Source: Octopus sinensis
Lineage: Eukaryota
Length of the DNA: 64,000 nt
Direction of reading: 5' to 3'
Assembly: GCF_006345805.1 (NCBI RefSeq)
Contig: NC_043011.1
Coordinates: 43,536,464 to 43,600,463, forward strand
The notes under the pieces are model-generated. The model was not told the DNA's origin. It did not search any database and saw only the letters and a list, made by a program, of their open reading frames with translations. This document shows positions 25,717 to 43,900 of this stretch, in pieces. The stretch's first letter is position 1. Every line of letters starts with the position of its first letter. Made by a program: the position numbers and the translations under genes.

Positions 25717-25854
25717 CCAAGTCTAGCGAAACACATCACTGAACAGCCACTAGTCAGCTATCGAATCTTCTCGGTTATACTTTTGTTTCGAAAATTTGCG
25801 ACAAACTATTTCAATACAGAATACGTCAATAAAATGATAGTTCAGCAACGCACA

Positions 25855-25911
25855 GCCGAAATAGGTCAGTTGAAGATCTAAAGGTCCCTGGTTCGATCCC
25901 GGGTTTCGGCA
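25855..25911 (+). pseudogene. First array monomer: tRNA-Phe with 16-nt internal deletion
   Basis: GCCGAAATAGGTCAGTTG|AAGATCT.., 57 nt; loses 3' D-arm and 5' anticodon stem. Confidence 0.92.
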
Positions 25912-26038
25912 TCGTACCTCATTTTTATTTTGGTCTTAGGTTCAATCGAATAATAAATATTTACGAAATTTCTATGACAACTTGGTTTTCTTCATGCCAT
26001 CTCTCCATGTCAATAAAATGGTAAATCAACAACGCACA

Positions 26039-41000: not shown

Positions 41001-43486
41001 AAATCAGCAATGTACAGCCGACATAGCTCAGTTGGGAGAGCGTTAGACTGAAGATCTAAAGGTCCCTGGTTCGATCCCGAGTTTCGGCATCGTACCTCAT
41101 TTTTATTTTGGTCTTAGGTTCAATCGAATAATAATATTTACGAAATTTCTATGACAACTTGGTTTTCTTCATGCCATCTCTCCATGTCAATAAAATGGTA
41201 AATCAGCAACGCACAGCCGAAATAGCTCAGTTGGGAGAGCGTTAGACTGAAGATCTAAAGGTCCCTGGTTCGATCCCGGGTTTCGGCATCGTACCTCATT
41301 TTTATTTTGGTCTTAGGTTCAATCGAATAATAAATATTTACGAAATTTCTATGACAACTTGGTTTTCTTCATGTCATCTCTCCATGCCAATAAAATGGTA
41401 AATCAGCAACGCATAGCCGAAATAGCTCAGTTGGGAGAGCGTTAGACTGAAGATCTAAAGGTCCCTGGTTCGATCCCGGGTTTCGGCATCGTACCTCATT
41501 TTTATTTTGGTCTTAGGTTCAATCGAATAATAAATACTTACGAAATTTCTATGACAACTTGGTTTTCTTCATGTCATCTCTCCATGACAATAAAATGGTA
41601 AATCAGCAACGTACAGCCGACATAGCTCAGTTGGGAGAGCGTTAGACTGAAGATCTAAAGGTCCCTGGTTCGATCCCGGGTTTCGGCATCGTACCTCATT
41701 TTTATTTTGGTCTTAGGTTCAATCGAATAATAAATATTTACGAAATTTCCATGACAACTTGGTTTTCTTCATGTCATCTCTCCATGCCAATAAAATGGTA
41801 AATCAGCAACGCATAGCCGAAATAGCTCAGTTGGGAGAGCGTTAGACTGAAGATCTAAAGGTCCCTGGTTCGATCCCGGGTTTCGGCATCGTACCTCATT
41901 TTTATTTTGGTCTTAGGTTCAATCGAATAATAAATAGTTACGAAATTTCTATGACAACTTGGTTTTCTTCATGTCATCTCTCCATGCCAATAAAATGGTA
42001 AATCAGCAACGCATAGCCGAAATAGCTCAGTTGGGAGAGCGTTAGACTGAAGATCTAAAGGTCCCTGCTTCGATCCCGGGTTTCGGCATCGTACCTCATT
42101 TTTATTTTGGTCTTAGGTTCAATCGAATAATAAATACTTACGAAATTTCTATGACAACTTGGTTTTCTTCATGTCATCTCTCCATGTCAATAAAATGGTA
42201 AATCAGCAATGTACAGCCGACATAGCTCATTTGGGAGAGCGTTAGACTGAAGATCTAAAGGTCCCTGGTTCGATCCCGGGTTTCGGCATCGTACCTCATT
42301 TTTATTTTGGTCTTAGGTTCAATCGAATAATAAATATTTACGAAACTTCTATGACAACTTGGTTTTCTTCATGCCATCTCTCCATGTCAATAAAATGGTA
42401 AATCAGCAACGCCCAGCCGAAATAGCTCAGTTGGGAGAGCGTTAGACTGAAGATCTAAAGGTCCCTGGTTCGATCCCGGGTTTCGGCATCGTACCTCATT
42501 TTTATTTTGGTCTTAGGTTCAATCGAATAATAAATATTTACGAAATTTCTATGACAACTTGGTTTTCTTCATGTCATCTCTCCATGTCAATAAAATGGTA
42601 AATCAGCAATGTACAGCCGAAATAGCTCAGTTGGGAGAGCGTTAGACTGAAGATCTAAAGGTCCCTGGTTCGATCCCGGGTTTCGGCATCGTACCTCATT
42701 TTTATTTTGGTCTTAGGTTCAATCGAATAATAAATATTTACGAAATTTCTATGACAACTTGGTTTTCTTCATGCCATCTCTCCATGTCAATAAAATGGTA
42801 AATCAGCAACGCACAGCCGAAATAGCTCAGTTGGGAGAGCGTTAGACTGAAGATCTAAAGGTCCCTGGTTCGATCCCGGGTTTCGGCATCGTACCTCATT
42901 TTTATTTTGGTCTTAGGTTCAATCGAATAATAAATATTTACGAAATTTCTATGACAACTTGGTTTTCTTCATGCCATCTCTCCATGTCAATAAAATGGTA
43001 AATCAGCAACGCATAGCCGAAATAGCTCAGTTGGCAGAGCGTTAGACTGAAGATCTAAAGGTCCCTGCTTCGATCCCGGTTTCGGCATCGTACCTCATTT
43101 TTATTTTGGTCTTAGGTTCAATCGAATAATAATATTTACGAAATTTCCATGACAACTTGGTTTTCTTCATGTCATCTCTCCATGCCAATAAAATGGTAAA
43201 TCAGCAACGCATAGCCGAAATAGCTCAGTTGGGAGAGCGTTAGACTGAAGATCTAAAGGTCCCTGGTTCGATCCCGGGTTTCGGCATCGTACCTCATTTT
43301 TATTTTGGTCTTAGGTTCAATCGAATAATAAATATTTACGAAATTTCTATGACAACTTGGTTTTCTTCATGTCATCTCTCCATGTCAATAAAATGGTAAA
43401 TCAGCAATGTACAGCCGAAATAGCTCAGTTGGGAGAGCGTTAGACTGAAGACCTAAAGGTCCCTGGTTCGATCCCGGGTTTCGGCA
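26039..43486 (+). tRNA. trnF(GAA): 88 full-length tRNA-Phe(GAA) gene copies (first 26039-26111, last 43414-43486)
   Basis: Consensus GCCGAAATAGCTCAGTTGGGAGAGCGTTAGACTGAAGATCTAAAGGTCCCTGGTTCGATCCCGGGTTTCGGCA folds into the canonical eukaryotic tRNA-Phe cloverleaf with A and B boxes; most copies match consensus, a minority carry stem or box mutations. Confidence 0.97.
26121..26130 (+). terminator. Pol III terminator T-run, present in each monomer
   Basis: ATTTTTATTTT about 10 nt after each tRNA 3' end. Confidence 0.8.
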
Positions 43487-43900
43487 TCATATCTCATTTT
43501 TATTTTGTTCTTAGTTTCAATCGAATAATAAATATTTACGAAATTTCTATGACAACTTGGTTTTCTTCATGCCATCTCTCCATAAACATTGTTCAACTAC
43601 GCAACATCATTGTAAATGGAAGGAAACAGATCACAGACCAGTGAAAATTATTATTTTTTCAACGTTTTATGATGCAATTTTAATTAATAACTATGTTTGG
43701 AAATTTTCAAACAAAAAATTTACATTTTTAAGAAAGATTACGTGAGATGCATTCCTCTAGTTACGGGTATTGTTTTGGAAATAGTTTTTTCCCTTGGTAA
43801 TTGTAGAAGAGACTTAAAATTATTTCACGCCTACATTTTCTCTGCTACAAATGAAGAAAACTAAAAGAAAAGAAATATATTTCGCACTCATTCTACAGGT

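What the first reader, a model, noticed from the sequence alone, without database searches (positions are those of the whole stretch)
25825..43583. 17.8-kb satellite made of 89 tRNA-Phe(GAA) genes at an exact ~200-bp period
Seen: 88 full-length canonical tRNA-Phe genes plus one deleted copy, head-to-tail, each with A box, B box and a T-run terminator. All keep the GAA anticodon and most equal the solitary gene at 45701. Known: tandem tRNA arrays exist in Entamoeba, Xenopus, Arabidopsis and human chr1, but those usually have larger or multi-isoacceptor units. Inference: a single-isoacceptor, minimal-unit gene satellite whose period is close to a nucleosome repeat could be a tunable tRNA-Phe dosage reservoir (tissue- or stage-specific), a source of tRNA fragments, or a TFIIIC/condensin chromatin organiser beside satellite DNA. 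I cannot tell whether it has been reported.
Basis: partly seen in the sequence, partly recalled or inferred. Interest (0 to 1): 0.9.

Follow-up and report, generated by a model that had tools for sequence, protein, structure and literature searches.

The report
Octopus tandem tRNA-Phe gene array
A single phenylalanine-tRNA gene and its short flanks were copied head-to-tail about 89 times in an octopus chromosome, giving a real array that resembles tandem tRNA gene arrays already known in plants and fish; about half its copies are damaged, and it is one of at least five such arrays in this genome.

Summary
Window 25825-43583 holds 89 head-to-tail units of about 200 bp: 88 full-length tRNA-Phe(GAA) genes and one edge copy with a 16-nt deletion.

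The assembly statistics match Octopus sinensis GCA_006345805.1.

The unit runs from -30 to +97 around one Phe gene of a Phe-Asn module. Paralogous modules about 90% identical carry a single Phe gene at the same place. The array is therefore an in-situ tandem amplification.

Degenerate edge copies and a block of about 16-17 units repeated three times point to growth by unequal exchange.

Forty-nine copies are perfect, which is 49 of the 56 perfect copies in the assembly. The other 39 each carry a stem-breaking or invariant-base change, and 23 of them are hit in the B-box region. tRNA-body diversity equals that of most of the spacer, so I detect no selection on individual copies.

Every unit keeps the GAA anticodon and a T-run terminator, so intact units look transcribable. 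Expression could not be tested.

The same genome has similar single-isotype arrays for Arg-ACG, Thr-AGT, Asp-GTC and Glu-TTC, with units of 152-207 bp. This is a new member of a known kind, and of moderate interest.

The parts
25825..43583 (+). The whole array: 89 head-to-tail units. Each unit is a 30-nt leader, the 73-nt tRNA-Phe(GAA) and a 97-nt trailer, joined at ...CTCTCCAT|GTCAATAAAATGG...
   Evidence: TRF period 200, 88.7 copies, 97% matches; unit alignment and consensus; junction shown against single-copy paralogs
25855..25911 (+). Edge copy 1: tRNA-Phe remnant with a 16-nt deletion removing the D-arm to anticodon stem, plus one substitution
   Evidence: Rfam tRNA 34.6 bits against 69.8 for intact copies; alignment
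26039..43486 (+). 88 full-length tRNA-Phe(GAA) genes. 49 are identical to the canonical 73-mer. 39 are variants, all carrying a stem-breaking or invariant-base change.
   Evidence: ARAGORN; exact-match counts; variant table; Rfam scores 50.4-67.2 for variants; structural classification
31425..41415 (+). Higher-order structure: a block of about 16-17 units (about 3.3 kb) present three times (roughly units 29-45, 46-62, 63-78). It carries linked variants such as A14T+G53C, G45C+G53C, G63del and A6C+C49A.
   Evidence: Haplotype table; at an offset of 17 units, 2.4 differences per unit against a background of 5.9-7.1
43414..43583 (+). Last unit: a diverged edge copy (T39C in the tRNA, altered trailer TCATATCTCA) running into unique flank
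   Evidence: (64.3 bits)
24558..25824 (+). Left flank. It is homologous (89.8% over 1474 nt, together with unit 1) to the region upstream of a single Phe gene in a paralogous module at C15:54.158 Mb.
   Evidence: blastn against L031 3019-4488
43584..44190 (+). Right flank. It continues the ancestral module and includes a degraded tRNA-Asn(GTT) at 43901-43974.
   Evidence: 90.9% identity to L032 5078-5884; Asn scores 45.6 bits against 70.8-72.8 for the Asn genes at 18998 and 21463
45701..45773 (+). Solitary canonical tRNA-Phe(GAA). Its body is identical to the array consensus; its flanks are only about 83% similar.
   Evidence: (L007)
21463..22018 (-). Inverted paralogous Phe-Asn module: Phe at 21946-22018 with 2 substitutions (60.3 bits), Asn at 21463-21536

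Best explanation
This is an in-situ tandem amplification of a 200-bp RNA polymerase III gene cassette: 30 nt of upstream leader, the 73-nt tRNA-Phe(GAA) gene and 97 nt of trailer with its T5 terminator. It arose in one copy of a segmentally duplicated Phe-Asn tRNA module on a chromosome of Octopus sinensis.

Shown:
- One founding duplication joined ...CTCTCCAT to GTCAATAAAATGG...
- The array then grew and was partly homogenised by unequal exchange of single units and of multi-unit blocks. This left degenerate edge copies and a block of about 3.3 kb present three times.
- Individual copies are not protected by selection. Promoter-killing and stem-breaking variants have been copied along with everything else, so 49 units are perfect and 39 are damaged.

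Inferred:
- The 49 perfect units keep the A box, B box, an A/T-rich element at about -26 to -19 and the terminator. They are therefore transcription-competent by sequence and would yield canonical tRNA-Phe wherever the chromatin is open. I put about 50% on appreciable expression in some tissue.
- Any selection acts on the array as a whole (dosage), not on single copies.

The array is one instance of a recurrent process in this genome, which has also produced Arg-ACG, Thr-AGT, Asp-GTC and Glu-TTC arrays with 152-207-bp units.
For: Array anatomy.

Species: G000 has 2,719,151,902 bp in 13,516 contigs. This matches the table entry for O. sinensis GCA_006345805.1 (13,516 scaffolds, 2719.2 Mb) in PMC10700109.

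Unexpanded state: modules at C15:54.155-54.19 Mb are about 90% identical to both flanks and carry one Phe gene where the window has 89.

Unequal exchange: shared linked variants and the block repeat; degenerate first and last units.

No per-copy constraint:
- Segregating sites are 17/73 in the tRNA against 42/127 in the spacer (p=0.15).
- Nucleotide diversity (pi) is 0.018 in the tRNA against 0.020-0.023 in the trailer and mid-spacer.
- All 39 variant bodies break a stem pair or hit an invariant base, and 23 are changed in the B-box region.
- Every variant lowers the Rfam score.

Cis-elements: all units have a T-run at +10/+11 and the GAA anticodon.

Single locus: the only place in the assembly with Phe genes 60-330 nt apart. 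The trailer 24-mer occurs 88 times, all here.

Sister arrays.

Nothing else in the unit: the spacer does not fold (z +0.9 and +1.2) and has no Rfam match on either strand.
Against: - No reads were available, so copy number and the block triplication could be distorted by the PacBio-based assembly.
- No expression, chromatin or methylation data were available, so the activity statement is inference only.
- Overall spacer diversity (0.035) is twice that of the tRNA body (0.018). In the Arg array the tRNA is significantly less variable than its spacer (25/73 against 84/133 sites, p=8e-5). Weak constraint on bodies cannot be excluded.
- The array holds 49 of the 56 perfect canonical copies in the assembly. 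That fits a more important supply role than 'near-neutral by-product'.
Confidence: 0.8

Rival explanations
1. A regulated dosage reservoir: the array is kept because it supplies extra or stage-specific (for example maternal/oocyte) tRNA-Phe, as with the repeat-encoded maternal tRNAs and 5S rRNA of zebrafish.
For: - The array holds 49 of 56 perfect canonical (G57) copies. The commonest dispersed Phe genes are a different isodecoder, G57A, with about 19 copies.
- The Arg-ACG cluster likewise holds 38 of 42 perfect copies.
- Intact units keep all Pol III signals.
- There is no excess of CpG transitions (3 of 78 variant types), so long-term germline methylation is unlikely.
- The -30..-1 leader is the most variable part of the unit (18/30 sites, pi 0.065). 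This could reflect transcription-associated mutation.
Against: - 44% of copies are damaged, and B-box-null variants have spread to 19 units.
- tRNA bodies vary as much as the trailer and mid-spacer.
- About 30 apparently intact dispersed Phe genes exist.
- No expression data were available.
Confidence: 0.3
2. An epigenetically silenced, functionally inert gene satellite, like the clustered Pro, Cys and Ser-Tyr-Tyr tRNA genes of Arabidopsis, which keep canonical promoter elements but are not transcribed in most tissues.
For: - tRNA bodies evolve at a neutral-like rate and promoter-dead copies have propagated.
- The neighbourhood is rich in repeats and satellites.
- Precedent: PMC7544208. The upstream-variable, downstream-homogeneous asymmetry also occurs in Arabidopsis Pro arrays (PMC13437025).
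Against: - There is no CpG-decay signature, though this is weak evidence because the array is young.
- 56% of units are still perfect.
- Silencing cannot be read from sequence.
Confidence: 0.3
3. An assembly artefact: a short cluster over-expanded, or a longer one collapsed, by a PacBio CLR assembler.
For: - The assembly is long-read plus Hi-C, with 13,516 scaffolds.
- The array (17.8 kb) is about the length of long reads.
- Fifteen units are 199 bp long, which could reflect homopolymer errors.
Against: - Variation is structured and non-random: linked variants and three diverged copies of a 3.3-kb block at about 1.2% divergence rather than identity.
- Edge copies are degenerate, as expected of real arrays.
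- There are no Ns.
- Both flanks are collinear with paralogous modules.
- Five independent arrays of other isotypes show the same architecture.
Confidence: 0.07
4. A chromatin organiser: a dense block of TFIIIC sites acting as an insulator or condensin-loading site, with the 200-bp period matched to nucleosome spacing.
For: - 65 units keep an unchanged B-box region.
- tRNA gene repeats have been proposed as boundary elements in human (PMC4041453, seen, abstract only).
Against: - The period is fixed by the duplication breakpoints.
- Sister arrays have periods of 152-207 bp.
- B-box-null units are tolerated at 26%.
- Nothing here tests protein binding.
Confidence: 0.05
5. A cluster of tRNA-derived SINE or other mobile-element copies rather than genes.
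For: The genome is full of tRNA-like sequences: 619,363 first-look candidates for the tRNA model.
Against: - Bodies are full canonical tRNAs scoring 69.8 bits.
- A terminator lies 10-11 nt downstream of each.
- There is no SINE body, tail or target-site duplication.
- The unit occurs as a tandem array at one locus only.
- Its flanks are those of a resident gene module.
Confidence: 0.02

Closest known systems
Isotype-specific tandem tRNA gene arrays of plants (Arabidopsis Pro clusters of 24, 9 and 6 copies; Cys cluster with 0.4-kb units; maize Ile and Ala; barley Gln)
   Same: - Head-to-tail arrays of one isotype in which the whole unit, flanks included, is repeated.
- Canonical Pol III elements are retained.
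- Downstream flanks are homogeneous and upstream flanks more variable (PMC7544208; PMC10701932; PMC13437025).
   Different: - This one is in an animal (a cephalopod).
- It has more copies (88) and a shorter unit (200 bp) than the Arabidopsis examples I could read.
- The plant clusters are shown to be methylated and silent. That is unknown here, and there is no CpG-decay signal.
Zebrafish repeat-encoded (maternal) tRNA genes and Xenopus tandem tRNA/5S repeats
   Same: - Very many tRNA genes sit in tandem or highly repetitive regions.
- In zebrafish the repeat-encoded isodecoders differ from the few-copy ones and are maternal (PMC11417395; PMC2888827).
- Here the array carries G57 while the commonest dispersed genes carry A57.
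   Different: - Zebrafish and Xenopus clusters are mostly heterogeneous, with several isotypes per repeat and kb-scale units (PMC2888827; the Xenopus 3.18-kb unit is from my own knowledge).
- Here there is one gene per 200-bp unit.
- Stage-specific use is untested.
Human 1q23.3 tRNA variable-number tandem repeat
   Same: A tandem repeat containing tRNA genes, with copy-number instability (PMC4041453, abstract seen).
   Different: The human unit is 7.3 kb and GC-rich, binds CTCF and is present at 9-43 units per allele. It is not a minimal gene cassette.
Entamoeba histolytica tRNA arrays
   Same: Tandem arrays whose units contain tRNA genes (mentioned in PMC2888827).
   Different: From my own knowledge, Entamoeba units are about 0.5-1.8 kb with 1-5 tRNA types and short-tandem-repeat-rich spacers, and hold nearly all of the organism's tRNA genes. 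Here the spacer is unique sequence and dispersed genes coexist with the array.
Classical satellite DNA / 5S rDNA-type multigene arrays evolving by unequal crossing-over
   Same: - Monomers of 150-210 bp.
- Higher-order blocks, degenerate edge monomers and spread of variants irrespective of function.
   Different: - A single 17.8-kb locus rather than many or megabase-scale arrays.
- The monomer is a complete, potentially functional gene.

Membership tests
Homogeneous (isotype-specific) tandem tRNA gene array | At least 5 tRNA genes within 5 kb (PMC13437025), or neighbours less than 1 kb apart (PMC2888827), all of one isoacceptor family | tested here: met
   88 Phe(GAA) genes at 200-bp spacing; all keep GAA
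Homogeneous (isotype-specific) tandem tRNA gene array | Parallel head-to-tail orientation, with homology across the whole unit (gene plus both flanks) | tested here: met
   All copies are on the + strand; 97% unit identity including the spacer
Homogeneous (isotype-specific) tandem tRNA gene array | Units carry Pol III cis-elements (A box, B box, oligo-T terminator) | tested here: met
   The terminator is present in all units. The B-box region is unchanged in 65 of 88 and the A-box region in 82 of 88.
Homogeneous (isotype-specific) tandem tRNA gene array | Origin by local duplication of a resident gene | tested here: met
   Single-gene paralogous modules and the junction alignment
Epigenetically silenced clustered tRNA genes (Arabidopsis type) | Lack of transcripts despite canonical promoters; dense DNA methylation or heterochromatin | not testable with these tools
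   No expression or methylation data. The only indirect result is the absence of CpG-transition excess (3 of 78 variant types).
Maternal/oocyte-type repeated Pol III genes (zebrafish tRNA/5S, Xenopus) | The repeat-encoded isodecoder is distinct from the few-copy somatic isodecoder | tested here: inconclusive
   The array carries G57. The commonest dispersed form is A57 (about 19 copies), but 7 dispersed genes also carry G57.
Maternal/oocyte-type repeated Pol III genes (zebrafish tRNA/5S, Xenopus) | Oocyte- or early-embryo-restricted expression | not testable with these tools
   No RNA data
Satellite DNA | Long head-to-tail arrays of a monomer with concerted evolution or higher-order repeats | tested here: met
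   89 monomers; a block of about 16-17 units repeated three times
Satellite DNA | Non-coding monomer present at high genomic abundance or at many loci | tested here: not met
   The monomer is a complete gene. The unit junction occurs at this one 17.8-kb locus only.
tRNA-derived SINE | Diverged tRNA-like head joined to a body and a LINE-related or A-rich tail; dispersed copies with target-site duplications | tested here: not met
   Canonical full tRNA (69.8 bits) followed by a terminator at +11; no dispersed copies of the unit
Entamoeba-type tRNA arrays | Spacers rich in short tandem repeats; arrays hold essentially the whole tRNA complement | tested here: not met
   The spacer is unique sequence with no internal repeat (consensus). 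About 40 Phe-like genes lie outside the array.

The most novel reading that the evidence does not exclude
Octopuses may run a two-tier tRNA gene system. Minimal-unit tandem arrays (Phe, Arg, Thr, Asp, Glu) would carry one isodecoder and be switched on in bulk when translation demand is extreme, for example in oogenesis or the early embryo. Dispersed genes, for Phe mainly the A57 isodecoder, would serve ordinary tissues. This would be an independent invertebrate counterpart of the zebrafish/Xenopus maternal-type Pol III repeats.
Probability: 0.15. Interest if true: 0.65.

Novelty: new member of a known kind. Interest (0 to 1): 0.4.

Why it matters
Tandem single-isotype tRNA gene arrays are documented in plants and, in more complex form, in fish, frogs and humans. 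I found no report for cephalopods in the searchable literature.

This genome offers five such arrays with unusually small units. For Phe and Arg, one locus holds more than 85% of all perfect gene copies. That matters in three ways:
- **tRNA gene counts.** Counts and codon-adaptation estimates for octopus are badly distorted if arrays are counted naively, because 44% of the Phe units are damaged.
- **A test case in animals.** The arrays can show whether clustered tRNA genes are silent ballast or a switchable supply. Array-private markers make the test simple: a trailer 24-mer found only here, and private body variants.
- **Gene-to-satellite transition.** The array shows a gene turning into a satellite-like repeat by unequal exchange, with the unexpanded paralogs still present for comparison.

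Tried and rejected
- **Whole-genome tRNA census with the Rfam model.** Uninformative: 619,363 first-look candidates and only 63 scored.
- **B-box pair patterns as a substitute.** The GGTTCGA type found the arrays. The GAS subtype and the A57-type GGTTCAA gave mostly scattered SINE-like or non-tRNA repeats and no large array in the rows shown. Listings are cut at about 100 rows, so the census is a lower bound.
- **SINE or mobile-element reading.** Rejected; see the rivals.
- **A second function hidden in the spacer.** Rejected: no fold on either strand and no Rfam hit at E<=1. The window has no ORF of 150 aa or more other than low-complexity repeat translations.
- **Purifying selection on tRNA bodies.** Looked for but not detected in the Phe array. 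It is detectable in the Arg array.
- **CpG-decay test for germline methylation.** Negative, but weak.
- **Literature searches for octopus or mollusc tRNA arrays and tRNA-derived satellites.** Nothing relevant. The O. vulgaris repeat paper mentions only SINE classes.
- **Cross-species conservation.** Could not be tested: no relatives of this genome are available in the tools.
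Full report
**Observation.**
- ARAGORN tRNA-Phe(GAA) genes on the + strand between 26039 and 43486.
- The Rfam tRNA model matches all 88 above threshold, plus a truncated copy at 25855-25911.
- Tandem Repeats Finder reports a single array at 25871-43583: period 200, 88.7 copies, 97% matches.
- Of the 88 spacings, 64 are exactly 200 bp and the others are 197-203 bp. The first unit is 184 bp because it carries a 16-nt deletion.
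- The first leader starts at 25825 and the last trailer ends at 43583.
- There are no Ns in the window.

**Organism.** The window is C15:43,536,464-43,600,463 of a 2,719,151,902-bp assembly in 13,516 contigs. A published table lists exactly 13,516 scaffolds and 2719.2 Mb for the PacBio plus Hi-C assembly of Octopus sinensis, GCA_006345805.1 (PMC10700109). I take that as the source. From memory, not tested, the 73-nt sequence is the same as the vertebrate tRNA-Phe(GAA).

**Anatomy and origin.** Each unit has four parts:
- a 30-nt leader, GTCAATAAAATGGTAAATCAGCAACGCATA, with an A/T-rich element at about -26 to -19;
- the 73-nt gene;
- a 10-nt trailer, TCGTACCTCA, followed by T5;
- 82 more bases ending CTCTCCAT.

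The window lies in a tRNA cluster containing Asn, Phe and Lys genes. A paralogous cluster 10.6 Mb away on the same chromosome (C15:54.155-54.19 Mb) contains repeated Phe-(about 410-490 nt)-Asn modules in both orientations.

Both flanks of the array align to those modules:
- window 24558-26008 matches at 89.8% over 1474 nt;
- window 43384-44190 matches at 90.9% over 814 nt.

Each of those modules has a single Phe gene. The multiple alignment shows the ancestral reading ...ACGTCAATAAAATGG-[gene]-...CTCTCCAT|AAACAT..., and the array junction ...CTCTCCAT|GTCAATAAAATGG....

The 200-bp period is therefore just the distance between the two breakpoints of a founding tandem duplication. The paralogs serve as the unexpanded state.

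**How it has evolved.** Forty-nine of the 88 bodies are identical to the canonical sequence, and 39 differ. The recurrent changes are:

| Change | Copies | Effect |
|---|---|---|
| G53C | 19 | breaks the invariant G53-C61 pair and the B box |
| A6C | 6 | stem change |
| G45C | 6 | unpaired position; always occurs with G53C |
| C49A | 5 | stem change |
| deletion of G63 | 5 | T-stem deletion |
| A14T | 3 | invariant base |
| G30C | 3 | stem change |

- All 39 variant copies break a stem pair or hit an invariant nucleotide. Twenty-three are changed in the B-box region and 6 in the A-box region.
- Every variant lowers the covariance-model score, to 50.4-67.2 bits from 69.8. None is compensatory.
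- The variants are linked and recur in order. A block of about 16-17 units is present three times: at an offset of 17 units, neighbouring blocks differ by 2.4 positions per unit, against a background of 5.9-7.1.
- The first and last units are the most degenerate.

This is the classical signature of an array growing and homogenising by unequal exchange. It also argues that the sequence is not an assembler's invention.

**Selection.** Among the 87 internal units, substitutions segregate at 17 of 73 tRNA sites and 42 of 127 spacer sites (Fisher p=0.15). Nucleotide diversity by region is:

| Region | Diversity (pi) |
|---|---|
| tRNA body | 0.018 |
| Trailer and mid-spacer | 0.020-0.023 |
| -52..-31 | 0.041 |
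| -30..-1 leader (18 of 30 sites vary) | 0.065 |

The tRNA body is thus no better conserved than most of the spacer. By contrast, perfect-bodied Phe genes elsewhere in the genome share no flank similarity with the array beyond the gene itself, and many of the paralog genes whose flanks have diverged by about 10% differ by 0-1 base in the body. I conclude that single copies in the array are effectively neutral.

The upstream hot spot also appears in the Thr array (8 of 30 leader sites, against 0-2 elsewhere) but not in the Arg array. The same upstream-variable, downstream-homogeneous asymmetry is described for Arabidopsis Pro arrays (PMC13437025). It may reflect transcription-associated mutation or relaxed constraint, and I cannot tell which.

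CpG transitions make up only 3 of 78 variant types, so there is no sign of long-standing germline methylation.

**Genome-wide context.**
- The perfect 73-mer occurs 56 times in the assembly: 49 in the array, one at window 45701 and six elsewhere.
- Allowing up to 3 mismatches gives 122 copies. About 40 lie outside the array, mainly a G57A isodecoder with about 19 copies, 14 of them at C6:4.2-4.33 Mb.
- No other locus has two Phe genes 60-330 nt apart.
- The gene-trailer 24-mer occurs 88 times, all in the array.

The array is not one of a kind. A search for same-strand B-box pairs 111-311 bp apart gave 368 hits against 74 for the control. It uncovered these arrays in the same genome:

| Isotype | Copies and unit | Location |
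|---|---|---|
| Arg(ACG) | about 82-87 x 206 bp | C2:3.13 Mb |
| Thr(AGT) | 27 x 152 bp | C1:210.44 Mb |
| Asp(GTC) | 18 x 159 bp, plus many short runs | C5:18.29-18.40 Mb |
| Glu(TTC) | 13 x 168 bp | C9:76.06 Mb |

In the Arg array only 29 of 82 bodies equal the consensus. There the tRNA is significantly less variable than the spacer (p=8e-5). The Arg cluster holds 38 of the 42 perfect copies in the genome.

**What it most likely does.**
- Shown: the structure, the origin and the mode of evolution.
- Inferred: the 49 perfect units have everything a Pol III gene needs. All units keep the terminator and the anticodon, and the spacer contains no other detectable element on either strand. The perfect units would therefore produce normal tRNA-Phe if the chromatin allows.
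- Open: whether the chromatin does allow it. Arabidopsis clusters with intact promoters are silenced (PMC7544208). Zebrafish maternal tRNAs come from highly repetitive regions (PMC11417395).
- The lack of per-copy constraint and the spread of promoter-dead units argue against a finely maintained reservoir.
- The concentration of perfect copies in arrays, and the distinct isodecoder, keep a dosage or stage-specific role alive.
- My estimate is roughly even odds that the array is appreciably transcribed somewhere.
- The chromatin-organiser idea has no support. The period is not special: sister arrays range from 152 to 207 bp.

**Comparison and novelty.** By the published operational definitions this is a homogeneous tandem tRNA gene array (PMC2888827, PMC13437025). 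The closest described cases are the plant isotype-specific arrays. It fails the tests for a SINE, for Entamoeba-type arrays and for satellite DNA in the strict sense, because it is a single locus with a genic monomer. I found no description of cephalopod tRNA arrays in the searchable literature, although the genes are presumably listed in automated annotation (inference). It is a new member of a known kind, of moderate interest. Its best use is as a tractable animal test of whether clustered tRNA genes are silent or switchable.

**Limits.** No reads, RNA, chromatin or sister-species genomes were available. The census of arrays is a lower bound.

Noticed in passing
G000 C2:3,129,900-3,149,500 (L036-L039); C1:210,436,050-210,440,070 (L035); C5:18,291,900-18,295,040 (L040) and C5:18.357-18.399 Mb (L042); C9:76,062,200-76,064,310 (L041): Four more single-isotype, minimal-unit tandem tRNA arrays exist in the same genome: Arg-ACG (about 82-87 x 206 bp), Thr-AGT (27 x 152 bp), Asp-GTC (18 x 159 bp plus many runs of 2-5 units) and Glu-TTC (13 x 168 bp). 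The Arg cluster holds 38 of the 42 perfect Arg-ACG copies in the assembly.
   Followed up: partly
L041:4066-4138 (C9:76,064,066-76,064,138): One unit of the Glu(TTC) array has its anticodon mutated to TTT, so ARAGORN calls it tRNA-Lys. It is a Glu-bodied tRNA with a Lys anticodon, an anticodon shift inside an array.
   Followed up: no
L042:3759-3839 and 7299-7379 (C5:18.37 Mb): Within the Asp arrays some units carry an internal partial duplication of the gene (…CCCCGCCTGTCA…GGTTCGATTCCCCGCC repeated). These give 80-81-nt objects that ARAGORN mislabels tRNA-Ser(CGA).
   Followed up: no
G000 C6:4,205,000-4,332,000 (L013, L020-L030): A looser cluster of about 14 tRNA-Phe genes of the G57A isodecoder, at a spacing of about 1-1.5 kb on both strands. 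Their flanks are conserved and complementary (…GCCACCA-[tRNA]-TCCGGTGGCTGG…) and are followed by long T runs. This could form a leader-trailer helix in the precursor.
   Followed up: no
window 50371-60508: A composite satellite region lies 6.8 kb downstream of the array. Blocks of degenerate 13/24/37-nt A4T4-type repeats (AAAATTTTCGGTG…) alternate, with a period of roughly 1-1.9 kb, with blocks of a 32-nt repeat (GCCAGCGGTGCCAAAATCAAAAAGTATGGAAG) and an interspersed element of about 400 bp. That element also occurs in the 54-Mb tRNA cluster.
   Followed up: partly
window 43901-43974 versus 18998-19071 and 21463-21536: The tRNA-Asn(GTT) next to the array is degraded (45.6 bits). The two Asn genes on the minus strand score 70.8-72.8 bits. 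The Phe at 21946-22018(-) has two substitutions (60.3 bits) and the Lys-CTT at 48429(-) scores 52.6 bits.
   Followed up: partly
array units, positions -30..-1 of each gene (e.g. window 26009-26038): The 30 nt upstream of each gene are about three times more polymorphic among units than the rest of the spacer or the tRNA body (18/30 sites, pi 0.065). The same holds in the Thr array but not in the Arg array. The cause is unexplained: possibly transcription-associated mutation, possibly relaxed constraint.
   Followed up: partly
whole genome G000: The Rfam tRNA model's first-pass filter flags 619,363 candidate sites, which suggests a very large population of tRNA-related repeats (SINEs). Many GGTTCAA-type B-box pairs lie in such elements.
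   Followed up: no
window 14595-20538: A dense run of long (ATT)n/(TAA)n microsatellites, 20-64 repeats each, punctuates the region upstream of the tRNA cluster.
   Followed up: no
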